Below, piece after piece: positions 9,801 to 60,300 of a DNA stretch of 64,000 bases. The first letter of the stretch is position 1. Each line of letters begins with the position of its first letter. This DNA comes from Lepidodermella squamata (Eukaryota > Animalia > Gastrotricha), in the NCBI GenBank assembly GCA_047495785.1, contig JBLDXI010000048.1:1178001-1242000 (forward strand), in the 5' to 3' direction. A program made the position numbers and the translations under genes. Under the pieces are notes generated by a model. That model was not told the origin of the DNA and ran no database searches. It was given only the letters and a program-made list of their open reading frames with translations.

Positions 9801-12800
9801 TGGGCAGCGGCCGCGGATAGTTTGTACAGAATTTCGAGGGCTATCCGCCGATATAAGAATTATGGGCCGGCGATACATGGTTCGCGCTGAAATTGCGTGC
9901 AAAGTCAGTCAAATTGGCGTGCGGCCAAGGCCTAAATCGCGATTTCCGAAGCCGATATCGACACGATCGGCGGCGAATTTGGGCAGCGGCCGCTGATAGT
10001 TTGTACAGACTTTAGAGGGCTATCCGCCGATATAAGATTTATTGACCGGCGATACTTGGTTCGCGCTGAAATTGCGTGCAAAGTGAGTCAAATTGGCGTG
10101 CGGCCAAGGCCTAAATCGCGATTTCCGAAGCCGATATCGACACGATCGGCGGCGAATTTGGGCAGCGGCCGCTGATAGTTTGTACAGACTTTAGAGGGCT
10201 ATCCGCCGATATAAGATTTATTGACCGGCGATACTTGGTTCGCGCTGAAATTGCGTGCAAAGTGAGTCAAATTGGCGTGCGGCCAAGGCCTAAATCGCGA
10301 TTTCCGAAGCCGATATCGACACGATCGGCGGCGAATTTGGGCAGCGGCCGCGGATAGTTTGTACAGAATTTCGAGGGCTATCCGCCGATATAAGAATTAT
10401 GGGCCGGCGATACATGGTTCGCGCTGAAATTGCGTGCAAAGTCAGTCAAATTGGCGTGCGGCCAAGGCCAAAATCGCGATTTCCGAAGCCGATATCGACA
10501 CGATCGGCGGCGAATTTGGGCAGCGGCCGCGGATAGTTTATACAGAATTTCGAGGGCTATCCGCCGATATAAGAATTATTGACCGGCGATACTTGGTTCG
10601 CGCTGAAATTGCGTGCAAAGTCAGTCAAATTGGCGTGCGGCCAAGGCCAAAATCGCGATTTCCGAAGCCGATATCGACACGATCGGCGGCGAATTTGGGC
10701 AGCGGCCGCGGATAGTTTGTACAGAATTTAGAGGGCTATCCGCCGATATAAGAATTATGGGCCGGCGATACATGGTTCGCGCTGAAAATGCGTGCAAAGT
10801 CAGTCAAATTGGCGTGCGGCCAAGGCCTAAATCGCGATTTCCGAAGCCGATATCGACACGATCGGCGGCGAATTTGGGCAGCGGCCGCGGATAGTTTGTA
10901 CAGAATTTCGAGGGCTATCCGCCGATATAAGAATTATGGGCCGGCGATACATGGTTCGCGCTGAAATTGCGTGCAAAGTCAGTCAAATTGGCGTGCGGCC
11001 AAGGCCTAAATCGCGATTTCCGAAGCCGATATCGACACGATCGGCGGCGAATTTGGGCAGCGGCCGCTGATAGTTTGTACAGACTTTAGAGGGCTATCCG
11101 CCGATATAAGATTTATTGACCGGCGATACTTGGTTCGCGCTGAAATTGCGTGCAAAGTGAGTCAAATTGGCGTGCGGCCAAGGCCTAAATCGCGATTTCC
11201 GAAGCCGATATCGACACGATCGGCGGCGAATTTGGGCAGCGGCCGCTGATAGTTTGTACAGACTTTAGAGGGCTATCCGCCGATATAAGATTTATTGACC
11301 GGCGATACTTGGTTCGCGCTGAAATTGCGTGCAAAGTGAGTCAAATTGGCGTGCGGCCAAGGCCTAAATCGCGATTTCCGAAGCCGATATCGACACGATC
11401 GGCGGCGAATTTGGGCAGCGGCCGCGGATAGTTTGTACAGAATTTCGAGGGCTATCCGCCGATATAAGAATTATGGGCCGGCGATACATGGTTCGCGCTG
11501 AAATTGCGTGCAAAGTCAGTCAAATTGGCGTGCGGCCAAGGCCAAAATCGCGATTTCCGAAGCCGATATCGACACGATCGGCGGCGAATTTGGGCAGCGG
11601 CCGCTGATAGTTTGTACAGAATTTAGAGGGCTATCCGCCGATACAAGAATTATGGGCCGGCGATACTTGGTTCGCGCTGAAATTGCGTGCAAAGTCAGTC
11701 AAATTGGCGTGCGGCCAAGGCCTAAATCGCGATTTCCGAAGCCGATATCGACACGATCGGCGGCGAATTTGGGCAGCGGCCGCTGATAGTTTGTACAGAC
11801 TTTAGAGGGCTATCCGCCGATATAAGATTTATTGACCGGCGATACTTGGTTCGCGCTGAAATTGCGTGCAAAGTGAGTCAAATTGGCGTGCGGCCAAGGC
11901 CTAAATCGCGATTTCCGAAGCCGATATCGACACGATCGGCGGCGAATTTGGGCAGCGGCCGCGGATAGTTTGTACAGAATTTCGAGGGCTATCCGCCGAT
12001 ATAAGAATTATGGGCCGGCGATACATGGTTCGCGCTGAAATTGCGTGCAAAGTCAGTCAAATTGGCGTGCGGCCAAGGCCAAAATCGCGATTTCCGAAGC
12101 CGATATCGACACGATCGGCGGCGAATTTGGGCAGCGGCCGCGGATAGTTTATACAGAATTTCGAGGGCTATCCGCCGATATAAGAATTATTGACCGGCGA
12201 TACTTGGTTCGCGCTGAAATTGCGTGCAAAGTCAGTCAAATTGGCGTGCGGCCAAGGCCAAAATCGCGATTTCCGAAGCCGATATCGACACGATCGGCGG
12301 CGAATTTGGGCAGCGGCCGCGGATAGTTTGTACAGAATTTAGAGGGCTATCCGCCGATATAAGAATTATGGGCCGGCGATACATGGTTCGCGCTGAAAAT
12401 GCGTGCAAAGTCAGTCAAATTGGCGTGCGGCCAAGGCCTAAATCGCGATTTCCGAAGCCGATATCGACACGATCGGCGGCGAATTTGGGCAGCGGCCGCG
12501 GATAGTTTGTACAGAATTTCGAGGGCTATCCGCCGATATAAGAATTATGGGCCGGCGATACATGGTTCGCGCTGAAATTGCGTGCAAAGTCAGTCAAATT
12601 GGCGTGCGGCCAAGGCCTAAATCGCGATTTCCGAAGCCGATATCGACACGATCGGCGGCGAATTTGGGCAGCGGCCGCTGATAGTTTGTACAGACTTTAG
12701 AGGGCTATCCGCCGATATAAGATTTATTGACCGGCGATACTTGGTTCGCGCTGAAATTGCGTGCAAAGTGAGTCAAATTGGCGTGCGGCCAAGGCCTAAA

Positions 12801-15800
12801 TCGCGATTTCCGAAGCCGATATCGACACGATCGGCGGCGAATTTGGGCAGCGGCCGCTGATAGTTTGTACAGACTTTAGAGGGCTATCCGCCGATATAAG
12901 ATTTATTGACCGGCGATACTTGGTTCGCGCTGAAATTGCGTGCAAAGTGAGTCAAATTGGCGTGCGGCCAAGGCCTAAATCGCGATTTCCGAAGCCGATA
13001 TCGACACGATCGGCGGCGAATTTGGGCAGCGGCCGCGGATAGTTTGTACAGAATTTCGAGGGCTATCCGCCGATATAAGAATTATGGGCCGGCGATACAT
13101 GGTTCGCGCTGAAATTGCGTGCAAAGTCAGTCAAATTGGCGTGCGGCCAAGGCCAAAATCGCGATTTCCGAAGCCGATATCGACACGATCGGCGGCGAAT
13201 TTGGGCAGCGGCCGCTGATAGTTTGTACAGAATTTAGAGGGCTATCCGCCGATACAAGAATTATGGGCCGGCGATACTTGGTTCGCGCTGAAATTGCGTG
13301 CAAAGTCAGTCAAATTGGCGTGCGGCCAAGGCCTAAATCGCGATTTCCGAAGCCGATATCGACACGATCGGCGGCGAATTTGGGCAGCGGCCGCTGATAG
13401 TTTGTACAGAATTTAGAGGGCTATCCGCCGATACAAGAATTATGGGCCGGCGATACTTGGTTCGCGCTGAAATTGCGTGCAAAGTGAGTCAAATTGGCGT
13501 GCGGCCAAGGCCAAAATCGCGATTTCCGAAGCCGATATCGACACGATCGGCGGCGAATTTGGGCAGCGGCCGCGGATAGTTTGTACAGAATTTCGAGGGC
13601 TATCCGCCGATATAAGAATTATGGGCCGGCGATACATGGTTCGCGCTGAAATTGCGTGCAAAGTCAGTCAAATTGGCGTGCGGCCAAGGCCAAAATCGCG
13701 ATTTCCGAAGCCGATATCGACACGATCGGCGGCGAATTTGGGCAGCGGCCGCTGATAGTTTGTACAGAATTTAGAGGGCTATCCGCCGATATAAGATTTA
13801 TTGACCGGCGATACTTGGTTCGCGCTGAAATTGCGTGCAAAGTGAGTCAAATTGGCGTGCGGCCAAGGCCAAAATCGCGATTTCCGAAGCCGATATCGAC
13901 ACGATCGGCGGCGAATTTGGGCAGCGGCCGCTGATAGTTTGTACAGAATTTAGAGGGCTATCCGCCGATACAAGAATTATGGGCCGGCGATACTTGGTTC
14001 GCGCTGAAATTGCGTGCAAAGTGAGTCAAATTGGCGTGCGGCCAAGGCCAAAATCGCGATTTCCGAAGCCGATATCGACACGATCGGCGGCGAATTTGGG
14101 CAGCGGCCGCGGATAGTTTGTACAGAATTTCGAGGGCTATCCGCCGATATAAGAATTATGGGCCGGCGATACATGGTTCGCGCTGAAATTGCGTGCAAAG
14201 TCAGTCAAATTGGCGTGCGGCCAAGGCCAAAATCGCGATTTCCGAAGCCGATATCGACACGATCGGCGGCGAATTTGGGCAGCGGCCGCTGATAGTTTGT
14301 ACAGAATTTAGAGGGCTATCCGCCGATACAAGAATTATGGGCCGGCGATACTTGGTTCGCGCTGAAATTGCGTGCAAAGTCAGTCAAATTGGCGTGCGGC
14401 CAAGGCCTAAATCGCGATTTCCGAAGCCGATATCGACACGATCGGCGGCGAATTTGGGCAGCGGCCGCTGATAGTTTGTACAGAATTTAGAGGGCTATCC
14501 GCCGATACAAGAATTATGGGCCGGCGATACTTGGTTCGCGCTGAAATTGCGTGCAAAGTGAGTCAAATTGGCGTGCGGCCAAGGCCAAAATCGCGATTTC
14601 CGAAGCCGATATCGACACGATCGGCGGCGAATTTGGGCAGCGGCCGCGGATAGTTTGTACAGAATTTCGAGGGCTATCCGCCGATATAAGAATTATGGGC
14701 CGGCGATACATGGTTCGCGCTGAAATTGCGTGCAAAGTCAGTCAAATTGGCGTGCGGCCAAGGCCAAAATCGCGATTTCCGAAGCCGATATCGACACGAT
14801 CGGCGGCGAATTTGGGCAGCGGCCGCTGATAGTTTGTACAGAATTTAGAGGGCTATCCGCCGATATAAGATTTATTGACCGGCGATACTTGGTTCGCGCT
14901 GAAATTGCGTGCAAAGTGAGTCAAATTGGCGTGCGGCCAAGGCCAAAATCGCGATTTCCGAAGCCGATATCGACACGATCGGCGGCGAATTTGGGCAGCG
15001 GCCGCTGATAGTTTGTACAGAATTTAGAGGGCTATCCGCCGATACAAGAATTATGGGCCGGCGATACTTGGTTCGCGCTGAAATTGCGTGCAAAGTGAGT
15101 CAAATTGGCGTGCGGCCAAGGCCTAAATCGCGATTTCCGAAGCCGATATCGACACGATCGGCGGCGAATTTGGGCAGCGGCCGCGGATAGTTTGTACAGA
15201 ATTTCGAGGGCTATCCGCCGATATAAGAATTATGGGCCGGCGATACATGGTTCGCGCTGAAATTGCGTGCAAAGTCAGTCAAATTGGCGTGCGGCCAAGG
15301 CCAAAATCGCGATTTCCGAAGCCGATATCGACACGATCGGCGGCGAATTTGGGCAGCGGCCGCTGATAGTTTGTACAGAATTTAGAGGGCTATCCGCCGA
15401 TACAAGAATTATGGGCCGGCGATACTTGGTTCGCGCTGAAATTGCGTGCAAAGTGAGTCAAATTGGCGTGCGGCCAAGGCCAAAATCGCGATTTCCGAAG
15501 CCGATATCGACACGATCGGCGGCGAATTTGGGCAGCGGCCGCGGATAGTTTGTACAGAATTTCGAGGGCTATCCGCCGATATAAGAATTATGGGCCGGCG
15601 ATACATGGTTCGCGCTGAAATTGCGTGCAAAGTCAGTCAAATTGGCGTGCGGCCAAGGCCAAAATCGCGATTTCCGAAGCCGATATCGACACGATCGGCG
15701 GCGAATTTGGGCAGCGGCCGCTGATAGTTTGTACAGAATTTAGAGGGCTATCCGCCGATACAAGAATTATGGGCCGGCGATACTTGGTTCGCGCTGAAAT

Positions 15801-18800
15801 TGCGTGCAAAGTCAGTCAAATTGGCGTGCGGCCAAGGCCTAAATCGCGATTTCCGAAGCCGATATCGACACGATCGGCGGCGAATTTGGGCAGCGGCCGC
15901 TGATAGTTTGTACAGAATTTAGAGGGCTATCCGCCGATACAAGAATTATGGGCCGGCGATACTTGGTTCGCGCTGAAATTGCGTGCAAAGTGAGTCAAAT
16001 TGGCGTGCGGCCAAGGCCAAAATCGCGATTTCCGAAGCCGATATCGACACGATCGGCGGCGAATTTGGGCAGCGGCCGCTGATAGTTTGTACAGAATTTC
16101 GAGGGCTATCCGCCGATATAAGAATTATGGGCCGGCGATACATGGTTCGCGCTGAAATTGCGTGCAAAGTCAGTCAAATTGGCGTGCGGCCAAGGCCAAA
16201 ATCGCGATTTCCGAAGCCGATATCGACACGATCGGCGGCGAATTTGGGCAGCGGCCGCTGATAGTTTGTACAGAATTTAGAGGGCTATCCGCCGATATAA
16301 GATTTATTGACCGGCGATACTTGGTTCGCGCTGAAATTGCGTGCAAAGTGAGTCAAATTGGCGTGCGGCCAAGGCCTAAATCGCGATTTCCGAAGCCGAT
16401 ATCGACACGATCGGCGGCGAATTTGGGCAGCGGCCGCTGATAGTTTGTACAGAATTTAGAGGGCTATCCGCCGATACAAGAATTATGGGCCGGCGATACT
16501 TGGTTCGCGCTGAAATTGCGTGCAAAGTGAGTCAAATTGGCGTGCGGCCAAGGCCTAAATCGCGATTTCCGAAGCCGATATCGACACGATCGGCGGCGAA
16601 TTTGGGCAGCGGCCGCGGATAGTTTGTACAGAATTTCGAGGGCTATCCGCCGATATAAGAATTATGGGCCGGCGATACATGGTTCGCGCTGAAATTGCGT
16701 GCAAAGTCAGTCAAATTGGCGTGCGGCCAAGGCCAAAATCGCGATTTCCGAAGCCGATATCGACACGATCGGCGGCGAATTTGGGCAGCGGCCGCTGATA
16801 GTTTGTACAGAATTTAGAGGGCTATCCGCCGATACAAGAATTATGGGCCGGCGATACTTGGTTCGCGCTGAAATTGCGTGCAAAGTGAGTCAAATTGGCG
16901 TGCGGCCAAGGCCTAAATCGCGATTTCCGAAGCCGATATCGACACGATCGGCGGCGAATTTGGGCAGCGGCCGCGGATAGTTTATACAGAATTTCGAGGG
17001 CTATCCGCCGATATAAGAATTATGGGCCGGCGATACATGGTTCGCGCTGAAAATGCGTGCAAAGTCAGTCAAATTGGCGTGCGGCCAAGGCCTAAATCGC
17101 GATTTCCGAAGCCGATATCGACACGATCGGCGGCGAATATGGGCAGCGGCCGCGGATAGTTTGTACAGAATTTCGAGGGCTATCCGCCGATATAAGAATT
17201 ATGGGCCGGCGATACATGGTTCGCGCTGAAATTGCGTGCAAAGTCAGTCAAATTGGCGTGCGGCCAAGGCCAAAATCGCGATTTCCGAAGCCGATATCGA
17301 CACGATCGGCGGCGAATTTGGGCAGCGGCCGCTGATAGTTTGTACAGAATTTAGAGGGCTATCCGCCGATACAAGAATTATGGGCCGGCGATACTTGGTT
17401 CGCGCTGAAATTGCGTGCAAAGTGAGTCAAATTGGCGTGCGGCCAAGGCCAAAATCGCGATTTCCGAAGCCGATATCGACACGATCGGCGGCGAATTTGG
17501 GCAGCGGCCGCGGATAGTTTGTACAGAATTTCGAGGGCTATCCGCCGATATAAGAATTATGGGCCGGCGATACATGGTTCGCGCTGAAATTGCGTGCAAA
17601 GTGAGTCAAATTGGCGTGCGGCCAAGGCCAAAATCGCGATTTCCGAAGCCGATATCGACACGATCGGCGGCGAATTTGGGCAGCGGCCGCTGATAGTTTG
17701 TACAGAATTTCGAGGGCTATCCGCCGATACAAGAATTATGGGCCGGCGATACTTGGTTCGCGCTGAAATTGCGTGCAAAGTCAGTCAAATTGGCGTGCGG
17801 CCAAGGCCAAAATCGCGATTTCCGAAGCCGATATCGACACGATCGGCGGCGAATTTGGGCAGCGGCCGCGGATAGTTTGTACAGAATTTAGAGGGCTATC
17901 CGCCGATATAAGAATTATGGGCCGGCGATACATGGTTCGCGCTGAAATTGCGTGCAAAGTCAGTCAAATTGGCGTGCGGCCAAGGCCCAAATCGCGATTT
18001 CCGAAGCCGATATCGACACGATCGGCGGCGAATATGGGCAGCGGCCGCGGATAGTTTGTACAGAATTTCGAGGGCTATCCGCCGATATAAGAATTATGGG
18101 CCGGCGATACATGGTTCGCGCTGAAATTGCGTGCAAAGTCAGTCAAATTGGCGTGCGGCCAAGGCCAAAATCGCGATTTCCGAAGCCGATATCGACACGA
18201 TCGGCGGCGAATTTGGGCAGCGGCCGCTGATAGTTTGTACAGAATTTCGAGGGCTATCCGCCGATACAAGAATTATGGGCCGGCGATACTTGGTTCGCGC
18301 TGAAATTGCGTGCAAAGTGAGTCAAATTGGCGTGCGGCCAAGGCCTAAATCGCGATTTCCGAAGCCGATATCGACACGATCGGCGGCGAATTTGGGCAGC
18401 GGCCGCGGATAGTTTATACAGAATTTCGAGGGCTATCCGCCGATATAAGAATTATGGGCCGGCGATACATGGTTCGCGCTGAAAATGCGTGCAAAGTCAG
18501 TCAAATTGGCGTGCGGCCAAGGCCTAAATCGCGATTTCCGAAGCCGATATCGACACGATCGGCGGCGAATATGGGCAGCGGCCGCGGATAGTTTGTACAG
18601 AATTTAGAGGGCTATCCGCCGATATAAGAATTATGGGCCGGCGATACATGGTTCGCGCTGAAATTGCGTGCAAAGTCAGTCAAATTGGCGTGCGGCCAAG
18701 GCCAAAATCGCGATTTCCGAAGCCGATATCGACACGATCGGCGGCGAATTTGGGCAGCGGCCGCTGATAGTTTGTACAGAATTTAGAGGGCTATCCGCCG

Positions 18801-19407
18801 ATACAAGAATTATGGGCCGGCGATACTTGGTTCGCGCTGAAATTTCGTGCAAAGTGAGTCAAATTGGCGTGCGGCCAAGGCCAAAATCGCGATTTCCGAA
18901 GCCGATATCGACACGATCGGCGGCGAATATGGGCAGCGGCCGCGGATAGTTTGTACAGAATTTAGAGGGCTATCCGCCGATATAAGAATTATGGGCCGGC
19001 GATACATGGTTCGCGCTGAAATTGCGTGCAAAGTCAGTCAAATTGGCGTGCGGCCAAGGCCTAAATCGCGATTTCCGAAGCCGATATCGACACGATCGGC
19101 GGCGAATATGGGCAGCGGCCGCGGATAGTTTGTACAGAATTTCGAGGGCTATCCGCCGATATAAGAATTATGGGCCGGCGATACTTGGTTCGCGCTGAAA
19201 TTGCGTGCAAAGTCAGTCAAATTGGCGTGCGGCCAAGGCCAAAATCGCGATTTCCGAAGCCGATATCGACACGATCGGCGGCGAATTTGGGCAGCGGCCG
19301 CTGATAGTTTGTACAGACTTTAGAGGACTATCCGCCGATATAAGATTTATTGACCGGCGATACTTGGTTCGCGCTGAAATTGCGTGCAAAGTGAGTCAAA
19401 TTGGCGT
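872..19407 (+). repeat. 179-bp tandem satellite DNA array, ~103.5 monomers
   Basis: Head-to-tail monomer ttatacagaatttcgagggctatccgccgatataag...gggcagcggccgcggatagt. Equivalent positions 947 and 19384 are exactly 103x179 apart. Monomers differ only by substitutions at about 15 recurrent sites plus a few singletons. Confidence 0.99.
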
Positions 19408-45382: not shown

Positions 45383-48300
45383 ATGCAAATGCGCGACACG
45401 CTTTATCACCTGAAGGAGCAGTCATCGTCCAGTAGTGTCAAGCATTTGAAAATTCGCCCGGCCGATTCGTGGTGGTGGCGGCGGTGGTCTTGTTGTCTGT
45501 CCAACGCCCAGCGCTACTCGATTTTCTGCCTTATTTTACTACTCTATTTTTGCGGCTGTCAAGCTGAGGTTTACACGTTTTCGGGCGAGGACTCGTTCGC
45601 GCGCCTGCCGGAATGGCGGCCTTGCGCTGACAGTCGGCTTCAGTTTCGATTCCGCACCCGATCTGAGCATGGCCTCGTTTTCTACGCCGATGATGGCGAC
45701 AAGGAGTACATATACCTTAAATTATATCAAGGTGAGGTTTTCGCTTATTTTTTTCCGTCTGCGATAGAGAATATTTTTACTACTCAAAATTAAGGTGGAA
45801 TTTTAGAAAGTTCAATTTGACCTACTTTCTAATTTTGACCCATTTGTTATCCTAATTGTCTCAACTCAAGTTTCGATTATCTAATTTGAGGCTAAATTGC
45901 GAAAAACCGCAAGTATCCCACCGGAATCCATCCCTGGTAATTGTCCAACTTCCCATCGCTGGGGATACTTTCCCTCAGGGGTATGAATATTTGGCAAAAA
46001 ATATATTTTAATTATAGAAAAAATGCCGCTATAAATTTCAGAAAGATATGAAATAAAATTGAAAAAATTAATTATGTCAGTCATTATTCAGCTTTCATCC
46101 AATTATAATTTTTGAAAAATGTCATATTTTTTCTGCTACCAGGCTCGTTACATTTACGATTGCGATTAAACCCGGCACAAGTCGATGACGTCCTAATACG
46201 CGCCGGCTATTCGACCACCTTAACCGACAACGCATGGCACAACGTCGAGGTTCGGCGAAGCGGAAAAGACACGTTCTTAATCGTCGACGAAGAACAACGA
46301 AAACGGTTCTTCGAACCCGGCGCAACCGAAGATTACTACCTGGGCGCGCCGGGTAACAGCGCGTACCGCCGGCCTAATCAGCTGTACTTTGGCGGCCTCA
46401 ATCGCAGTGTGTTGCTTCAAGACGTCGCGTTGCCTGTCATTGTTCATGAACCTCGGTTTCGCGGCTCGATAGCGAATGTCTCGTTTTCGAACTGCAGTGG
46501 TCCGTTGAGGCGGGTGCGCATGCTGGAGAGCAAGGGCGTGCGCGTGTCGGATGCGGCGCATGATTGCGTGCGCACGACGTGTTTAAATGGCGGCGCCTGT
46601 TTTGTTGATTTGGCGGATTTTTCGGAGAAATGCGACTGCAGCCAGACTATGTTCGATGGCGACTACTGCGATCAACGTAAGACTCTTAATTCCTAGCTAA
46701 ATTTCGATAATTGAAACCGGGAAACATTGAGAAATTATGGAGAAATTTATTTAAAAAATTCAGAAAAAAATTCCAAATAATCCTACTTGAAAATTAATAT
46801 CGGCACTTGATCCGCCTTAAAATGGTTCTTAAATGGGAATTTTCGTCTTTTTTTAGCTCGTAAATACGCTGAAGCTACATTTTACGGCAACGGTTACCTG
46901 TCCTATGGCTTGGACTATTTAGACGGGAAGCCTTTTCTATCAGTTGCCGATGAGGTCTCGCTATACTTCAAAACAAAGCAATCCGACGGCCTGCTATTCT
47001 ACAGTGGTGATTTAACCGACAGTTTGATCATAGCCCTGCGAAAAGGAACAATATGGGTGTCGTTAATGCTGGCTGGCGAAACTTCAGAAATGTCAGTCGA
47101 TGCGGCGCAGACAGGCCTCGGAGCTGCATCAGGTGGTTCTGACGCCTCAACAGGTGGCGCTTCTGGGGTACCAGCTAACCCGTCTCGCTTCGATGACGAC
47201 CAGTGGTACTGGTTACGCGTGAAGCGGCAGGTCAAAGAGGTAGGAAAAAATCGGAAGAATATCGAAATTTTTTTATTCACGAAAAAAGTGACAAATCCTA
47301 ACCTGAATTTTCGCAATTTTCCCGTCTCAATTTTTTGTTATTTTTTTTATTTGTTACTACAACTACTTTTCCTATTCCAAACTGTGCACTTTCACATTAT
47401 AGCTGGAAAATGGCCTCAAGGCCATTGCTGAGGTATGTTTCAAAAAAACATAATTTCCCGCGATTTTTTCGGTGGAAAATGGCTTACAGTCGAGTTGAAC
47501 AAGCTGTGTTACTTTTTGGTGTTTTATGTGTCGATAAAAAATTTGCCATTTTACACGCCTTTGGTATATCGGTTCTTGCTTGTCAATGTCTATTTTATTA
47601 CCGTTATTTTATGCGAAAAAAATTTGGAAGCGCATTTTTTTAATTATTCCCCGCCTTTCATTTGCTGCTTCGTGTGGGTCAATTTTTTTTTCTTGGCAAC
47701 GGGATTTTTTGGTAACTAAGGACGCATATTTCAAACTCCATGGCAACGCGGCTATTTTTTGCGCTCAAAATCACCCGAATCCATAAATATTATTGTCGAT
47801 GTAAAGTGGCATGCTAGTAAAATTTGGAAGAATAAAAAATCAATCACCAGGTGTTTTCGGAGATATCTCTTGCACTCAAAAAAAATTACCGCACCTTTTC
47901 GATGTAGTTATATAAAAATTGCGCACCGAGTATATTATTATCGCGCCTGCTTAATAGATGTTGTCTATAAATATGCGAAAAAATTGTCTGTAGAATGCTC
48001 TTCAATCGCTTTCAGTCGAGCAAATTTGTCGTTGTTTCAACTCAATTTTTTCTTAAATTTTTATAAAATTCCATTTTTTCCAGGTCGAAGTGCTGGTTAG
48101 GTCGTCTCGGCAGCAAGATTTCGCTGTTCGAAAAGTCGGCACCTTCGTCGGCCGGTTGACATTCCTCCGCAGCCGCATCATCTACGTAGGCGGGTCGGAA
48201 TCGAACGCGGCCTTGACCGCAAATCGGGTGCGCGCAAATTTCCGCGGCTGCCTTAAACAGGTCATTTACAAAGCCGACGCAATTTCGCTCGACGTGCTTG

Positions 48301-51300: not shown

Positions 51301-54300
51301 ATGATGCGCACATGTATTGTGTGTGCCATGCTAGAACGGGGAAGGGCGCGCAAAGCTATTGCCACTAAACTTACCTGGCACTGGGATGTCCCGCGATCAA
51401 CAAGGCGGGCGCCCCAAGGCGAGGCGTGCCATTGCACTTCGGCGCGCTGACCCTTGCGCTTTGCCTCATCGGCGGAGTCGGGTGCAAAATATTTCACTTG
51501 GGTATCGGCGTTCGCGCCACACCCGAAAATTCAAAAACAAATATCCTAATTAATCCAATTTATCGAATTCATTGATGGAAATCCGGAATTGATGAAAAAA
51601 ATTAATTTCAATTTGTTAAATTTACGTTATTTTTTTGCAGAATACGGAAACGTATTTGAAAATAGATGTTGGGGCGACGGCGTTTTCGTCCTTGTACAGG
51701 CAGTATTTTCAGCTGACGGTGACGCCGTCGTCGTCCTCATCCGTACTACTCGTGTCTTTCCTATTTCGAACCCGCCAAAAAGACGGCCTGCTGCTCTACT
51801 GGGGCCAGCCGCGCCAAGACTTTGTGCTGCTCGAGCTAACCGCTGGCTACCTTGTTTACGTTTTCGACACCGGTGATGGCGTCAAGGTAACTAAATTATC
51901 ATACCTAAATAAACCTTAAATCAGAAAATGCAGAAAAATATTGAAAATATGACTAAAATGATGTTCTTAACAAGTTTCGAATTTTCATGCGGCGTTCAGA
52001 ATTGATAAAAATTGACCTTGAACTGAGATGAATCGTTGTGTTTACAGACTTCAGAGTCGTATCAAGACAGTGAGGTATCTATCATCGCAGTGTTTAACCC
52101 TATTCATTTTCAATTTTATTATTATTTAAGAATCTATAGCTACATATACCTACGTTCCAATGCTTTGGAACAGTCTTCGGTTCTTTCCCCAAAATTCTCA
52201 GAATTTTCCCAAATTCCAATGCCTGATTAGCTAATCCATTTTCTTTCGAATTACAACCTCCTCCATTTAGTAGTCTGAATTAGGAAAAATATAGGAAATT
52301 CATGAATTTCACCTTCTGTCGCTTAGAACCTTCTTTATTTGCGATTTTGTTTCAATTTCAATTTTAAAAAGATGTCAAAAATGTAAAAACAAAGTCCAAC
52401 TGGAATTTTATGATGGGATGCTGGGAACTTTTAAAGGGAAAAAATAGAAAAATTTGATTACTCATTTGTGTGGCATACCCAGGAAAATTGTTGGGAAAAT
52501 CTTACGCCGGTACCAAATTTAATTTAATTCTATACCTCACCATTTTATTCGATATTTAACTGATTAGGGTTAGGACACAGAGAAAGAAATGACCTTTTTC
52601 TCTTCTCTCGGGTTAGGGTTCGGTGAGTCGTGATCGGGTTAGGCTTTGGGTTAGGTTGGGGTTGAGGGCTGGGTCTTGAAATATGGGATAATTCGTCAGG
52701 GTGAAAATCGAATTTTTGTTGTACAATTATTTGAAAAATCAATAATATTATGGTTTTGCGATTGAGTTCAGAATCCACGCGAAGTGTAGGAATCTAAATC
52801 CAAGATTTCCACGAAATCGTGCTATGAGTTCTCGAAATCTTCTGAGACAAGTAAAATTAATGACTATAATTTCGGTCTCAGATCACTTTATCGACATCTT
52901 GAGGATTAAATATAGTCAAAAATCTTGAAATGTTACCTAGAAAAGCGAACTACCTTAGATTAGGATTCTTTTTCTGCCTTTGACTTCTGAGTTGAAAATT
53001 ATGTTGAATTTTTCAGAATTTTCTTGATTAATAATTTTGACCCGGATGTGTTTGTTTTCGCTTCAGGTACTCGAGGCGGATCCTAAAGACCGGCGCTTCC
53101 TGGCGGACGGCGCGTGGCACCACGTGCAGCTGCTGGTGGTCGACGCCGCCGCCGCCTCGCCGACGCACTACTTCGTCGTCGACCGGCGCGAGCTGAAATT
53201 CTCGTACGCAAACGCGCTGAACCGCAACGTCAACCTAAACCTAAACACGAAAAACTCGTCCCTGTACATCGGCGGCCTGCCGTCCGAGGCCTTCCAGGAC
53301 GGCTTCTTCCTGCCATCGGTTGTGAGCGCCCGCGCCGGCTTCGTCGGCTGCCTCGCCAATTTCCAGCTGAACGACGTTTACCTTAACCTAGCGTCACGCT
53401 TGACCGCCTGGACGCGGCCCCAGGTCGGCCAAATCGTGCCCGGGTGCCGCGATTTGACTAAATCCGAGTGCCGAAAATCGCCCTGTAAAAACATGGGCGA
53501 GTGCATAGAAGAGTACGACTCGGTCTCCTGCATCTGTGAAATGACCTCGTTCGACGGACAACGCTGCTCGGACGAAACGTTCGCGCTGCGTTTCGACCCA
53601 GAGCGGCAACAGCCGTACGGGTCGCGGCCGGGTTTCGTCCGCTACGCCCTGCCCGAGTCGACCCAACCAAACACCCTGCGAGACCGCGTCGCCCTGGCGT
53701 TCCGCACGAAATCACTGAGGCGTGGCGGCAAGCGGTCGACCCTGCTACACGTCCTCGGCGCTAAACAGCCCGGCCAGCCTCACCCGGATTTCATCCGAAT
53801 CGACGTTATGTTCGATAGGGTTGAGGTCCAGTACAACATGGGCGTCGATACGGTGACAATGGGCTGGTCCCCACCCTCCGACCGGGCCGGCCTCCAGCAA
53901 CAGGGCGCGTTCAATTTGAACGACGACAAGTGGCACGTTGTGCGCTTCAAACGCTGGGGCCCTAATGCGTCGCTTCAGGTCGACGAACACCCGGAAATTG
54001 TGCGCACGCCGCAAGGTGAGTCGAAAAGTTGCAATTTTTCACGTAATTAGAGTTATATATCAATCGACTCGCCTTGACTCGCCCATTCGATTGGTATATA
54101 TCTCGAATTACGTGAAAAAAATCATTTTTATTCTCTACCTACAGCAAAAATTACCTGCTTGTAGATCCTTGATTTGTAGCAACTTTTTCTATCAATTCTC
54201 TCTCGGAAAAAAATCTGCGAAAAATTAACAATTATTATTATACCCTATATAAATCACCTGTGTTATTATTTTTACCGATATTACTAATTATTATTTTTTG

Positions 54301-57300
54301 AAAAATAACCACAACTAATTCCTGTTTTCCAAAATTAACCAAGACATCATTATTTTTTTTTGTATTCATATAATTTTTGCTCACGATTACCTTTGATATT
54401 ATATTATTGCCATCACAGTTTTCGTCACATCTGCTGGTAAGCACATTGCTGAATTTGAACAGCAATTAGTTTAATTAATATATATATGTGGGAACTAGCC
54501 TTATTAATTACAATAATTCATCATCATTTATCGGAAAAAAATTCACATATTTTCGTCGTGTTTTTTTAATTTTTCCGCGTACTATGATTTATTTTAGTTT
54601 TAATTTTTTCGATTTCTGCCTGCCAAATTTTTCGTCACCTTTTCCGCTATTATATAGCTGGAAGTTGCATGCGTGTCGCTATAAATTTTCGGTTTTCGGA
54701 GTGCATGCTTGTTTCTATTTTTATTTTTGAGTGTCTTTATTTGGGAACTTTTTCTTCGTTTCATTGCTTACCAATGTTGTGTCCGTAGTTGTAAAAAACG
54801 AGAAATCACCCTGAAATTCAGCATGCGAATTTTCTATTCAAAAAACAATTAATTAAAATCTGCATTTATTTTTGGCGTAATTTTTGAAATTTAACAGGTC
54901 GTATCTATTAGCTTAGTCGTTGTGTATTTAATTTCCGTTAGTATAGTTCGTTGAAAAAACGAAACAAAACATCAATCAAATTCACCGCTTAACAACCAGA
55001 TTAATCAATTTTACACTCGTATTAAATGCTATTAAAAATCTGGTTGTGATATCGGAATTTCACGTTTCAAAGGTATTAATTTGTTGTTTTTTGCGATTGA
55101 ATTTTTTCCAGATCACAAATTTCGAACTTTCAACTCAATAGCCGACGTCTATATAGGCGCCGGTGTAAAAGATGACTCGGTTGTCGATGCATTTGCTGGC
55201 CGGATTCGAGGTACTTTTTGAAAATTTTGAAAGTTTCGAATTTTTATATCTTTTTTTCTTTTTTTTCCAGGCCTCGTTTTCAACGGAATTCCGCTTATTA
55301 GATGGTTCGGCGAAGGCCGTCGCGATCGATTTTCTAGCGATACGGTCAATTTCTTGGAAGATTTGAGGTTGGTGCCAAATATTTCCGCCCTAATAATTTA
55401 ACTCTGGTGCAATTCGGTCCTAAAAAAAATCGAGCATATATCTTTTATTCTCTCTCTCATGTCTAATCGCATTTCCTCGAGACCGGCAATTTCGGCGTCT
55501 ACTTTTAGGCCCGATTATTTATACATCATATGGGGGTTATTTTTATTCAATTTAATTTCGCCCTCTCCGAGACGTAAAATCTTGCGTATAATTTATATCG
55601 CTATTATATAGGATAAATGTTTAAACAAGATGCGCATTTTAGGGACGCGCGGTTTCGCTTGGTCCCTGCGCGGCGCGAAGATGGCCTCGCGATGCGATTA
55701 AATGCGCGCGCCGCGCTCGCTCTCTAAAACCGATTTCAATGATTACACTCGAAATTTTGATGCGCAATATTTCCTCGCGATAATTTTTTTTCATCGTCGC
55801 TCAACTCAGTGCGCGGAATTTTATTTATTATTTATTATTGTTGTTATTTTTATTTTCCTCAACTTGTCAAAATCTTGTATTATTTTTTGCGCGGCTATTT
55901 ATTGCGAGAAAAACCGATTTTTATATGATAATTTCGGCGACAGAGCGTGAAACACGGCACGCTTGATTGACGATTTTTCTCATCATTATGGTGGCGCATT
56001 GATTTTTTGTCGCGCTTCTTATCTCTACAAAGTTTTTCTACAAAAATCCGCCTTAAAAATTATTTTTATACTTACGCAGGCGAATTTAACGTTACAATAT
56101 ATTACAGTATATAATCTGATAAGTAAATAATAAACAACTTGTTGTCGAAAAATCAAATTTCAACCGGACCGAGCAAGAAGAAGATTGTTGCCGAGTGCAT
56201 CAGCAGCTGATTCGACACCGGAAGAAGCGAAAAAAGCGCCTCTAATACGCGCGGGACGAGTCGAGAAGCAAGTTTGTTTGCTACTTTATTACTATGTATA
56301 TTGCTATCATCATCGTCGGTTTTTATCATCTTCGGTGGTTTTTATAATAATTTATTCGACGCGCCTCGTTTCGCAATTTAGCTGAAAAGAAAACAGGCTG
56401 GGATAATAACATAAGTGACTACGCGCGCAGCAAAAAATCCTAATTTGATTCGGCCACAGACGATGGCTTATATACTTGACAACTTTTTTTTCAGGCCTTC
56501 CGCACATGAAGAAATTCAGGCACTTCATTACATTAGTATTTCGCCTCGCCATTGCTAATAGACCGCGGTCACTCGTGTGTTGTAGTAGCCATTGAAAATT
56601 GACGTGATATAATGCGTTTTTTTGCGTCTTGACATGCGCTTTATCACATTAAACCGAATCGCGTGTGATTTTTCCGAACTTTGACATGCCGCCTTTCATT
56701 ATTAGCCGGCAGTCCCTTAAATTACAATTGTATCTCGGTGCGAAAATTTCCGCATTTCCTGGGCTTGTAATTTCTTAAAATAAAAAAAGTATTTTATTTC
56801 TTTTTTACTGCGACATAATTTCTCGTGTTCTGTGATCCGTGAAGCGCGACATGTGATTTATGTGTTATTATTTTGCAGATGCGCGCTATTCATTCTCATT
56901 TTAATAGGCGTATTAATTTCTAATAACTAAAACATGGCTTTTTTACAAAACGCGCGCGCGCACCTTTTGACTCACATTTTTATGCGCGTCTCAAATTTTC
57001 GCGGCCGCTTTTCATCTGGCTAAAATTCGCCGCTTGGCCCCGGCCTTTCATGTATATATCTAGTAAATATTAGAAATTATACCTGTAAGAGGTATGTAGT
57101 AATCTAGCGTCTTACAAGGTCACTTGAGAGAGCGATCGGCGCGAGACAGGCCTCTTAATATAATTAGTCTGAGTACGTCTCAGTTAATCGGATGCTTATA
57201 GCTATAAATAAAAACAAAATTTCGTGACCCTCGACAATTTTTTTCCGCCGTTGTTTTTCGTTTTATTTATTCCGCCCTGCTGTAAATGATATTTAGCGTT

Positions 57301-60300
57301 TCGCTAATATTTGCCCTCGACAATTGAGTCGCAGTCGTTTGATTTGCCATTAAATATTTACCCGGTGCGTAAAAATTTTGTTTATACCATCATCATTATT
57401 ATTATCAATCGCCGCCTTTTGATGATGATAAACATGATGTCGTAGAGCGGGCGGGCCACGTGCTGTCATAAAAATTCGATTTTTATTACCATCGTCGTCG
57501 AGACACACTCGAACGCATCTCTAAACAGCGCGCGCGCAAAAATCTGGCCGCCTTAATTGCTTCGTTTTTCGCTCCGAATTTCGTTCGTTCGCTCGTTCGG
57601 CCAGTGCTCGATATTTCGATTCCATCTCATCTACCTATAGTTGTGTTATTTCAGGCGCCATAAAAGTTGCATGTTATTGTTATTTTATTATTACCCTACA
57701 GCTAGCTACAACGTGTCTAATGTAGGAACAAAGCTATTTCCATTGGTATTGTTATTAGGCAGCAGCGTTACTGGACACCTTGAAGTGCGCGCGCCACTGC
57801 GGCTACATTTTAAGGCGGTGGTGGTCGTCAGGTAATATATGTGGGAGGCGAAAATAATAATTGATAATTGCGAATACGCGCGCACTCGATTTTTGCGAGG
57901 CCAGCGGCATGCATCGAGCCGTGATGGCTTAATAAGTGCGGTGATTTATCATTATATATCTCTCTTACACCCGGGCTCGCCTGTTTTGTTTGCGCGCGCA
58001 GTTGGCAAAATACACTTTTCGCGCTCTGTGATAATATAATATGTTTTAAGGTATAGGACCCGCTATATATGTTATTCCTGGGGGTGCGGCGGCGGAATAA
58101 CCGGGCGGCGAATGATAGATGAGCGAGCGTATCATCATCACCGTCCGTCGATGGGCTTATTACAAGACACTACGAATACAATAACAATAATGCAATAAAA
58201 CCAGCTGCTGCGCGCTTTTTATTAGCGCGCACGCGCACACGCGCGCAGTCGGTTAATTCATGCGCTTGGTCCACTCGACGCGGGCGCGCGCTTAATTTTC
58301 TTCGACTGCTGGCCTTTTTACGTTTTTATTACTTATTATCATTAACTCTCGACATCCTACTACTACTACAACTACAACTACTACCACTAGGTATAGTTGG
58401 GACTTTGTATCGCACGAGCGCGATACAATATATACCCAGGTTACTATTTTTACCCTATTTTTAGCCTGAAGAAATGTGAGATTGTCTTTCTCGGCTCTAT
58501 TTGTTTGGCATGGCAAAAAATCTGATATTACGATGACAGTGCCACTTGAGAGTATGACAAAATGCACGAGTGCAATCGAGCGTATCCGTGCCTGGTGGTC
58601 TCGCCCCTTTTTCTTGACGACGATGACGAACCCAATTTTCCATCACTTCATAGCAGAAAAAAATATATACCTCTCATTAATTATTAAACGCCTGCCTTCT
58701 AATCACTATTTGAGTAAGCAGTTTTTCGGATCGATTTACTCTCTCGGTTCATCCAGGGCGTAATTACCTGGATCGGTTCTTCTATACTCTAAAATATTGT
58801 AGGAATAATCCAAGAAATTTCGAAAATATTTTCCGCGGTTTATTATCCAAGTGCATCATCACTCTTGAGCAAAAAATGCCGAAAATCCAGCTTATTTCCA
58901 TTTGATCCGCTTTAAAAAAATCGCTATAAAAATATTGATACTTCTCAGGCTATTATTACGGCATTTTATCAATATTTAGTCTCTCACGTTCTAATATATT
59001 GCTCGATTTTTTTATACTCCGAATTGTTACCATTTTTTATAACATTTTCCCTAAAGGAGGGTGGATGTTTCAATTTTTTGTTGAATTACAATTTTATTTA
59101 ATCAAAACGACGACGGCGGTGAGGCGGTGAAAAATTTGATTCAGTGATTGTGAAGCCGCCTTAATAAAAAATCGCAAAAAATGGCGCCGTCGCGTTTGTG
59201 GTGTTTCATGGACGTTGGCAATTGCGTGGTTTCCGTTTTCAGACTGCCCATATCGAGCCCGGAACCGCCACAGCCGCCGCCGCAAACCGCCGCCACAAAG
59301 CCGGCCGCCGCAGTTAACACTCGCCAGCAGGAGAGGCCTGGTACTACGCCGCCAAATATGTTTGTTAAGGTGAGCGTTTTAAATATCAACACACATCAAG
59401 TGCTTTTTATACACCCAATGGACTATTTTATAGACTATATATTTATTGTAAGAAAAATCATCATGTTTTATCAATATATTAACAGTTGGGGCTGGTTTCT
59501 GTTCAAAATCAAACGTTATAGACACCCTGTATAACATCATGGGTGTTATAGGGAGATAATATTATTTTTAGCGCGTTTTATACACCCTGCTAATGATTTG
59601 CGTATATTTTTACTTGTGTTTATTTATTGTTATTATAACGCGCCATATTATATAGGGTGTTTACACCGGCTGCCTGCCATTTCGAGGCGCATATCCAGAA
59701 TGCATATTTTACCAGTTTTGGCACAGATATTTCACGCTTCATCGCTCAAATCTTACGAAAATTAGCGAAAATCCATTGAAATTATTTTTAACAATTTTCC
59801 CAGCCGTAAATATTAAGGAATTTTTAGCCGATAATTTCATCTCTAAAATTCTGTATTTGTTCAAAAAAATATTCATTTTCCAAATTCGGAATTTTTTCGG
59901 TATTTTCGGTATTTTTCAGTATTAATAATTTTGCCCAATTTCGGTAATAATTATTTGTGATTTATTTAGACAACCACTGAGTCAGTTCGACCAGGCGATT
60001 TGATACGCCCGACTGACGCAACGTGCGTGACCGATCCGTCGTCGTCGCGCTGCACGTCTACGCCGGTGTCTAGCGTAGACTCGTCCGATCTCGTCTCGCC
60101 CATCTCGGTTACCGAGCGCTTCGATTTCGTCGCCACTTCGCCTTCAGTCGGCGCACCGACTAAAGCCCCACCGCCGCCGCCTCCAGCGCCAAGCCAGCAA
60201 CCGGCGCTACCTCAAACTAGCCCAGTGCCGCAAACACAGCCACTTTTATCATCGACCCCGTTTACAGGGTGAGTTGAAATTTTCGTATAAAAATTCGATC

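What the first reader, a model, noticed from the sequence alone, without database searches (positions are those of the whole stretch)
54280..54830. SS4-position 18-nt microexon with neural splicing-factor motifs
Seen: the exon lies between RTPQ and DHKFRTFN with TGC 11 nt upstream, a GTAAGC donor, TGCATG at 54666 and 54702 downstream, and ACTAAT at ~54283 and ~54314 upstream. Established: vertebrate SS4 (30 aa) sits at ERYPAG|RQLTIFN in LNS6 and controls neuroligin/LRRTM/cerebellin binding; downstream TGCATG is the Rbfox enhancer and ACUAAY a STAR/QKI site. Inference: a regulated invertebrate SS4 using a 6-aa insert; with the SS2 and LNS5 candidates it suggests a combinatorial neurexin splice code.
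Basis: partly seen in the sequence, partly recalled or inferred. Interest (0 to 1): 0.75.

Follow-up and report, generated by a model that had tools for sequence, protein, structure and literature searches.

The report
Neurexin microexon at the SS4 site
A small invertebrate (probably a gastrotrich) has a real, conserved 18-base coding exon at exactly the spot where vertebrate neurexins carry their best-known splice insert (SS4), though whether the animal can also skip it is not yet shown.

Summary
Window 54419-54436 is an in-frame 18-nt segment (VFVTSA), with AG before it and GTAAGC after it, inside a phase-1 intron of a single-copy alpha-neurexin gene.

The exon is real:
- One spliced contig of a public RNA-like run joins 54015 to 54419 and 54436 to 55112.
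- The only close relative found carries a 21-nt version (VFVTSST) at the same place, although third codon positions are nearly saturated (46% identical).

The exon junction aligns to ERYP|G of vertebrate LNS6. That is where solved chains carrying the SS4 insert break.

Motifs:
- **GCAUG:** supported. It is enriched downstream in both species (P 0.002-0.004), and the genome encodes an Rbfox-type RRM.
- **UGC, ACUAAU and STAR-type U(U/A)AA:** none is enriched or conserved.

No skipped form was seen, but the data could not have shown a rare one. "Regulated" therefore stays an inference, at about 55-60%.

The insert shows no similarity to the vertebrate 30-residue insert. I rate it a new variant of a known kind, of moderate interest. 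Another first-stage note of this scan flagged the same stretch.

The parts
53067..54015 (+). Upstream constitutive exon: end of LNS5, EGF3 and the first two thirds of LNS6. It ends ..EIVRTPQ plus one base (phase 1), with donor AAG|GTGAGT.
   Evidence: Pfam Laminin_G_2/EGF. Best solved relatives are neurexin-1-alpha, E 3e-49, and the exon end aligns to ..VIERYP. Covered by RNA-like contigs of runs X1 and X2.
54419..54436 (+). 18-nt microexon encoding VFVTSA. It is symmetric (phase 1 to phase 1), has a weak pyrimidine tract (longest C/T run 2) and a strong donor CTG|GTAAGC.
   Evidence: Sequence. X2 contig record 6 lies on 53885-54013 / 54417-54435 / 55111-55169. A 21-nt homologue (VFVTSST) sits in L001, L007 and L008.
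54414..54428 (+). 15-nt word CACAGTTTTCGTCAC across the 3' splice site and the first 10 exon bases. It is identical in the relative species.
   Evidence: It is the longest shared word of the two introns. Third-position identity in the flanking exon is only 46%.
54408..54410 (+).
   Evidence: Present. There is no TGC near the acceptor in the relative, and TGC is not enriched.
54283..54319 (+). Two ACTAAT motifs (54283-54288 and 54314-54319), 100-135 nt upstream of the exon.
   Evidence: Present. P=0.05 in the upstream half, and absent from the relative.
54666..54707 (+). Two TGCATGC motifs (54666 and 54702), 231 and 267 nt after the microexon donor. They are candidate Rbfox enhancer sites.
54821..54826 (+). 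Third GCATGC, 385 nt after the donor.
54709..54757 (+). U/GU-rich intronic block. It gives the best local alignment to the relative's downstream intron half (L008 2034-2078).
   Evidence: Score 41 against a shuffle mean of 27.1, P=0.004.
54840..54854 (+). 15-nt word shared with the relative (L008 2004-2018). It lies in the same order as the exons and comes after the GCATGC in both species.
   Evidence: On its own E=0.39, so the support is weak.
54624..54649 (+). Degenerate second copy of the microexon region (73% over 26 nt, TTTTCGTCAC exact). It has neither AG nor GT.
55112..55210 (+). Downstream constitutive exon (D)HKFRTFNSIADVYIGAG.., the counterpart of vertebrate (G)RQLTIFNSQ..
   Evidence: It appears in the X2 spliced contig and is conserved in L007/L008.
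55271..55367 (+). Next LNS6 exon (G)LVFNGIPLIRWFGEG... The end coordinate is approximate.

Best explanation
Window 54419-54436 is a genuine 18-nt coding microexon of the animal's single alpha-neurexin gene. It lies in the phase-1 intron that interrupts LNS6 at the residue position of vertebrate splice site 4. It adds six residues (VFVTSA) between ..RTPQ and DHKFRTFN.., in the loop where vertebrate neurexins carry the SS4 insert.

Shown:
- The exon is spliced into mRNA.
- A diverged relative keeps it, with selection visible at the nucleotide level.
- GCAUG motifs cluster 150-390 nt downstream in both species.
- The genome encodes an Rbfox-type RRM.

Inferred:
- The exon has a weak acceptor and a strong donor, so it needs help to be recognised.
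- An Rbfox protein bound to the downstream GCAUGC sites promotes its inclusion in neurons.
- Where that help is missing the exon is skipped. This gives the canonical insert-free LNS6 that other phyla show.
- The two forms differ in how LNS6 meets its partners.
For: Real exon:
- X2 contig record 6 (207 nt) lies on 53885-54013, 54417-54435 and 55111-55169. It bridges both junctions by 59 nt or more. The 1-2 nt offsets are shared AG/G letters.
- X1 covers exon sequence only.
- The gene is single copy in the 121-Mb genome, so a retrocopy in this assembly is not the source.

Conservation:
- In L001, L007 and L008 (67-68% amino-acid identity in the flanking exon) a 21-nt in-frame exon follows CACAG and precedes GTAAG. 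It reads VFVTSST.
- The shared 15-nt word is the longest in the two introns.
- Third codon positions of the neighbouring exon are only 46% identical.

Position:
- The exon end aligns to ..IERYP of neurexin-1-alpha.
- Chains 3mw3, 2r1b and 3mw2, whose extra ~30 residues fit the SS4 insert, split within two residues of there.
- Most representatives from other phyla keep the spacing of the skipped form.

Regulation:
- GCATG occurs 3 times in 400 nt (P=0.002) in the window and twice in 416 nt (P=0.0035) in L008. There is none upstream in either species.
- The downstream intron halves share a block at P=0.004. The upstream halves do not.
- The Rbfox RRM exon is present at two loci and best matches RBFOX1/2 and ASD-1 at E 5e-21.
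- The acceptor is weak and the donor strong.
Against: - No skipped junction was seen. The only bridging contig includes the exon and runs unbranched through both junctions. This suggests inclusion is the main form in that run.
- The depth is only about 4, from one run whose RNA label is a guess.
- The relatives amount to one species, so the conservation rests on a single comparison.
- One of its two GCATG is missing in allele L007 through a 13-nt deletion.
- GCATG in the relative is GGCAUG, not the optimal UGCAUG.
- Nothing shows neural specificity or any effect on binding.
Confidence: 0.58

Rival explanations
1. The microexon is constitutive. It is always spliced in, so the animal simply has an LNS6 loop 6-7 residues longer, encoded by its own tiny exon. 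The intronic GCAUG sites only secure the recognition of a very short exon.
For: Only the inclusion form was seen, in a contig that passes both junctions without a branch. The exon is kept in frame in the relative.
Against: - Most other phyla's neurexins have the spacing of the skipped form. Both forms are therefore expected to fold.
- A weak acceptor, clustered downstream GCAUG and a conserved downstream intronic block are typical of regulated exons.
- Contigs drop rare variants, and the depth was about 4.
Confidence: 0.32
2. The exon is regulated, but by other factors than Rbfox. The candidates are an SRRM/eMIC-type microexon activator acting through the upstream UGC, or STAR/QKI/Sam68-like proteins as at vertebrate SS4.
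For: TGC sits 11 nt upstream and two ACTAAT lie upstream in the window. Vertebrate SS4 is controlled by STAR proteins (PMC3636136, from its title and abstract as listed).
Against: - The relative has no TGC near its acceptor and no ACTAAY.
- U(U/A)AA is not enriched after the exon in either species: P=0.64 and 0.99.
- A Pfam SRRM_C scan of the genome was blank, which is inconclusive.
Confidence: 0.08
3. There is no functional exon here. It is a chance AG..GT segment, and the spliced contig is an assembly artefact or splicing noise.
For: The intron holds 11 in-frame AG..GT segments by chance. There is one low-depth contig from a run whose RNA label is a guess.
Against: The same exon, with the same splice-site context and reading frame, is kept in a relative whose synonymous sites are close to saturated. 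The contig uses exactly the predicted junctions.
Confidence: 0.02

Closest known systems
Vertebrate neurexin splice site 4 (the 90-nt cassette exon of NRXN1-3, 30-residue insert in LNS6)
   Same: - Same gene family and same domain.
- Same residue position..RTPQ|D.. aligns to ..ERYPA|G...
- An in-frame cassette within one intron.
- The insert-free form has the canonical spacing.
   Different: - 18 nt (6 residues) rather than 90 nt (30 residues), with no sequence similarity to the vertebrate insert.
- No sign of the U(U/A)AA elements used by Sam68/SLM2. The likely enhancer is GCAUG.
- Alternative use is not yet shown.
- Cerebellins and LRRTMs, the ligands that depend on the vertebrate insert, are reported to be limited to vertebrates (PMC10084454).
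Rbfox-enhanced neuronal cassette exons ((U)GCAUG downstream promotes inclusion; established position rule, from my own knowledge)
   Same: - GCAUG is clustered within 400 nt downstream and absent upstream, in two species.
- An Rbfox-type RRM is encoded in the genome.
   Different: - Dependence on Rbfox is untested.
- One site is polymorphic in the relative.
- The relative has GGCAUG rather than UGCAUG.
Bilaterian neural microexon programme (3-27 nt exons activated by the Srrm234/SRRM4 eMIC domain)
   Same: The size, the preserved frame, the weak acceptor with a strong donor, and a synaptic adhesion gene as host.
   Different: The UGC next to the acceptor is not conserved. No eMIC-type match was found in the genome, which is inconclusive. 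The tissue pattern is unknown.
Predicted insert isoforms at the same site in other invertebrates (Magallana gigas neurexin-1 isoform X7; a beetle gene model)
   Same: - The oyster X7 model carries a 13-residue insert exactly between ..KDPT and EEQQWSVFNN. A transcript-derived protein lacks it.
- The beetle model P0020 has about 19 extra residues at the same site.
   Different: - The three inserts are unrelated in sequence.
- Thirteen other mollusc representatives lack any insert.
- The beetle model is an unnamed prediction and may be an annotation error.

Membership tests
Alpha-neurexin gene | Repeated LNS-EGF-LNS ectodomain followed by a syndecan-type transmembrane and cytoplasmic tail | tested here: met
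   Laminin_G and EGF exons lie from 45.4 to 55.4 kb and a Syndecan-domain exon at 63.2-63.5 kb. The best solved relatives are neurexin-1-alpha at E 3e-49. The best named relatives are neurexins of several phyla.
Neurexin SS4 cassette | The insert lies in LNS6 at ..ERYPA|G RQLTIFN.. | tested here: met
   The exon end aligns to ..IERYP. A fish insert-free form reads ERFPSG|RQLTIFNSQ against RTPQ D|HKFRTFNS. The longer chains 3mw3, 2r1b and 3mw2 break at query residues 107-108, which is this point.
Neurexin SS4 cassette | The insert is homologous to the vertebrate 30-residue insert | tested here: not met
   The insert is 6 residues (7 in the relative), VFVTS(A/ST). It is not alignable to the vertebrate insert as I know it.
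Neurexin SS4 cassette | Both insert-plus and insert-minus mRNAs are made | tested here: inconclusive
   Only the plus form was seen, in one contig at depth about 4. Contigs cannot show that a form is absent. No peptide fragments of either form are in the protein collection.
Neurexin SS4 cassette | Controlled by STAR proteins (Sam68/SLM2) through U(U/A)AA-rich intron sequence | tested here: not met
   U(U/A)AA is not enriched in the 150 nt after the exon: P=0.64 in the window and 0.99 in L008.
Neurexin SS4 cassette | The insert switches ligand binding (neuroligin, LRRTM, cerebellin) | not testable with these tools
This needs binding assays.
Rbfox-enhanced exon | (U)GCAUG within a few hundred nt downstream of the exon | tested here: met
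   TGCATG lies at +231 and +267 and GCATG at +385, P=0.002.
Rbfox-enhanced exon | The motif is conserved in related species | tested here: met
   GCATG lies at +151 and +169 in L008 and L001, P=0.0035-0.004. GCATGC is kept in all three alleles, and the other copy is deleted in L007. Only one relative species was available.
Rbfox-enhanced exon | An Rbfox protein is present | tested here: met
   An RRM exon at two loci best matches RBFOX1/2 and ASD-1 at E 5e-21. The next RRM family scores 7e-15.
Rbfox-enhanced exon | Inclusion depends on Rbfox and on the motifs | not testable with these tools
   This needs a minigene or a knock-down.
SRRM4/eMIC neural microexon | Exon of 3-27 nt that preserves the frame | tested here: met
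   18 nt in the window and 21 nt in the relative, both in frame.
SRRM4/eMIC neural microexon | UGC motif just upstream of the acceptor | tested here: inconclusive
   TGC sits at -11 in the window. The relative has none near its acceptor, and its only upstream TGC is about 125 nt away.
SRRM4/eMIC neural microexon | A factor carrying an eMIC domain in the genome | tested here: inconclusive
   The Pfam SRRM_C six-frame scan was blank, and its control genomes contain no animals.

The most novel reading that the evidence does not exclude
Switching an insert on and off at the SS4 intron of LNS6 is not a vertebrate invention. Either it dates back to early bilaterians, or it has arisen repeatedly at the same phase-1 intron. 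In this gastrotrich an Rbfox-driven 6-residue microexon would then tune neurexin-neuroligin pairing between neuron types, as a minimal form of the vertebrate splice code.
Probability: 0.25. Interest if true: 0.75.

Novelty: new variant of a known kind. Interest (0 to 1): 0.52.

Why it matters
Reviews state that extensive neurexin alternative splicing appears exclusive to vertebrates (PMC12665717; PMC3229692). For the honeybee, only the coincidence of SS2 and SS4 with intron positions was reported (PMC2570956).

Here there is a transcribed, conserved extra exon at exactly the SS4 site in a distant protostome, with a plausible Rbfox enhancer. This would make the origin of the best-studied synaptic splice switch testable in a very small nervous system. 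If the exon proves constitutive, it is only a lineage-specific loop extension and of modest interest.

Tried and rejected
Searches and tests that gave nothing:
- **Metagenome scans for more relatives:** both were blank, the protein-pattern scan and the DNA pattern of the conserved exon word plus donor.
- **Word searches:** the 316-residue exon found only P0001. Its last 60 residues found nothing. The collection therefore holds no transcript-derived fragments that could show a skipped form.
- **Exhaustive representative search:** apart from P0001 it gave no relative above 42% identity.
- **Downstream 33-residue exon against solved structures:** too short to find anything.
- **Pfam Fox-1_C and SRRM_C scans of the genome:** blank and uninformative. 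A first Rbfox peptide pattern was also blank. The second pattern hit.
- **RNA folding:** in both species the predicted fold encloses the microexon in a long-range stem, but the z-scores are 0.04 and 0.28, so this is no evidence. The 10-14 nt inverted repeats around the exon and next to the third GCATGC are at chance level in this AT-rich intron.
- **Other motifs:** STAR-type U(U/A)AA, YCAY, UGC and ACUAAY show no enrichment or no conservation.
- **Literature:** five searches found no report of an SS4-site insert in any invertebrate.

This excluded structure prediction of LNS6 with and without the insert, and any search for the skipped junction.

Full report
**1. The gene**

The + strand of the window from about 45.4 to 63.6 kb carries an alpha-neurexin-like gene.
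- Stop-free stretches there hit Pfam Laminin_G and EGF repeatedly. The last exon hits the Syndecan-type tail.
- The exon 53067-54015 (316 codons) matches solved neurexin-1-alpha chains at E 3e-49.
- The best named relatives are neurexins of flies, tardigrades, hemichordates, molluscs and fish, all at only 31-36% identity.
- The gene is single copy in the 121-Mb assembly.
- Earlier notes of this scan take the genome for the gastrotrich Lepidodermella squamata. I did not check this. It fits the lack of any annotated close relative.

**2. The observation**

All coordinates are right.
- The upstream exon ends at 54015 in phase 1 (..RTPQ + g).
- AG is at 54417-54418. The 18 nt at 54419-54436 read VFVTSA. 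The donor is CTG|GTAAGC.
- The next exon starts at 55112 (g+at = D, then HKFRTFN).
- TGCATG is at 54666 and 54702, a further GCATG at 54821, ACTAAT at 54283 and 54314, and TGC at 54408.
- The anatomy alone is weak evidence. The intron holds 11 in-frame stop-free AG..GT segments, but only this one has a consensus donor. Its acceptor is poor compared with the neighbouring ones: the longest C/T run is 2, against 5-20.

**3. It is a real exon**

- Three public runs held parts of the upstream exon. X3 is genomic and covers everything.
- In X2 one 207-nt contig lies on 53885-54013, 54417-54435 and 55111-55169. The 1-2 nt shifts are letters shared by both sides of each joint (AG, G). These are therefore exactly the predicted junctions, each bridged by 59 nt or more.
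- X1 covers exon sequence only.
- No contig joins 54015 to 55112. The runs are kept as contigs at depth about 4, which drop rare variants, so this says little about skipping. The unbranched passage suggests that inclusion is the main form in that sample.

**4. It is conserved**

- The only close relative in 5.8 and 1.8 billion proteins is P0001, at 67-68% identity. It has two cluster mates. Their metagenome contigs L001, L007 and L008 are alleles of one species.
- In that species the intron after ..RSPQ holds CACAG, then 21 nt reading VFVTSST, then GTAAG. About 416 nt later comes the exon DHKFRTFNS.
- The 15-nt word across the acceptor is the longest one the two introns share.
- Third codon positions of the flanking exon are only 46% identical. 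The acceptor and the first ten exon bases are therefore under selection at the nucleotide level.
- Length (18 against 21 nt) and the last residues differ, but the frame is kept.

**5. It is the SS4 position**

- The exon end aligns to ..VIERYP of neurexin-1-alpha.
- A fish insert-free isoform reads ERFPSG|RQLTIFNSQ against RTPQ-D|HKFRTFNS.
- Chains 3mw3, 2r1b and 3mw2 are about 30 residues longer than their insert-free counterparts, which fits the SS4 insert. Their alignment breaks at this very point.
- Most representatives of other phyla have the spacing of the skipped form.
- The insert itself shows no likeness to the vertebrate 30 residues.

**6. Regulation**

- *Rbfox-type motif.* GCATG is enriched downstream in the window (3 in 400 nt, P=0.002; all three are GCATGC) and in the relative (2 in 416 nt, P=0.0035). 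It is absent upstream in both. One copy is lost by a 13-nt deletion in allele L007, and GCATGC is kept in all three alleles.
- *Conserved intron sequence.* The downstream intron halves share a U/GU-rich block (P=0.004), and the upstream halves do not. A 15-nt word follows the GCATGC in the same order in both species. On its own it is weak.
- *Rbfox gene.* The genome encodes an Rbfox-type RRM at two loci. The best solved matches are RBFOX1/2 and C. elegans ASD-1 at E 5e-21, clearly ahead of other RRMs.
- *Other motifs.* The UGC at -11 and the ACUAAU sites are not conserved and not enriched. STAR-type U(U/A)AA is not enriched. The enclosing RNA stems are no better than shuffles.
- *Reading.* An Rbfox-enhanced, weakly defined microexon is the best reading. 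That it is ever skipped is inferred, not shown.

**7. Known or new**

- Reviews hold that extensive neurexin splicing is vertebrate-only. For the honeybee, only the coincidence of SS2 and SS4 with intron positions was noted. Five literature searches found no invertebrate SS4 insert.
- Database models do hint at such inserts. Oyster neurexin-1 isoform X7 has 13 extra residues at the same point, while a transcript-derived protein and 13 other mollusc representatives lack them. A beetle model has about 19. These inserts are unrelated to each other and to this one.
- I therefore file this as a new variant of a known kind: the same site and the same logic, with a different and much smaller insert and probably a different regulator.

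**8. Limits**

- There is one low-depth contig and one relative species.
- There are no raw reads, no tissue data and no binding data.

Noticed in passing
window 875-19407: A satellite array: 103.5 copies of a 179-bp unit, 96% matches, GC about 0.52 with strong G-over-C skew.
   Followed up: partly
window 59178-59249 (L008 6667-6738): A 72-nt block is 90% identical to the relative, far above the 64-78% of the coding exons. It reads AAAATGG followed by MAPSRLWCFMDVGNCVVSVF and ends in a CAG acceptor. The differences fall at third codon positions. It may be the start of a short, gamma-like neurexin isoform from an internal promoter. Rfam gave no credible match.
   Followed up: partly
window 54035-54119: A 33-nt inverted repeat (91% complementary, 19-nt loop) lies at the start of the SS4 intron. 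The genomic run X3 shows raised depth and loose ends there, so the element is probably repeated elsewhere in the genome, like a miniature transposon.
   Followed up: no
window 54624-54649: A degenerate second copy of the microexon region lies 210 nt downstream and 17 nt before the first TGCATGC. TTTTCGTCAC is exact. AG and GT are both lost. It may be the relic of a duplication or a binding site. The relative does not have it.
   Followed up: partly
L005 (G000:C7:1974811-1974845, -) and L006 (G000:C32:374775-374809, +): Two loci carry an identical 35-nt stretch of the Rbfox RRM exon. They may be two genes or two haplotype copies.
   Followed up: no
L007 about 1660-1690, compared with L008 1895-1910: There is an allelic 13-nt deletion in the relative species. 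It removes one of the two GCATG downstream of the microexon.
   Followed up: yes
Proteins P0158/P0006, P0008/P0156, P0004/P0151: Annotated invertebrate neurexin isoforms differ by short inserts.
- Oyster: 9, 13 and 3 residues. The 13-residue one is at the SS4 site.
- The hemichordate Ptychodera: 7 + 7 residues, one just after the first EGF domain.
- Drosophila grimshawi: 7 residues about 80 residues downstream of the SS4 position.
By my reading of their positions, some of these resemble vertebrate SS1, SS2 or SS3. This was not tested.
   Followed up: partly
window 47403-47432: Another first-stage note marks a 30-nt microexon candidate at the SS2 position of the same gene. It was not tested here. 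The relatives' contigs do not reach it.
   Followed up: no
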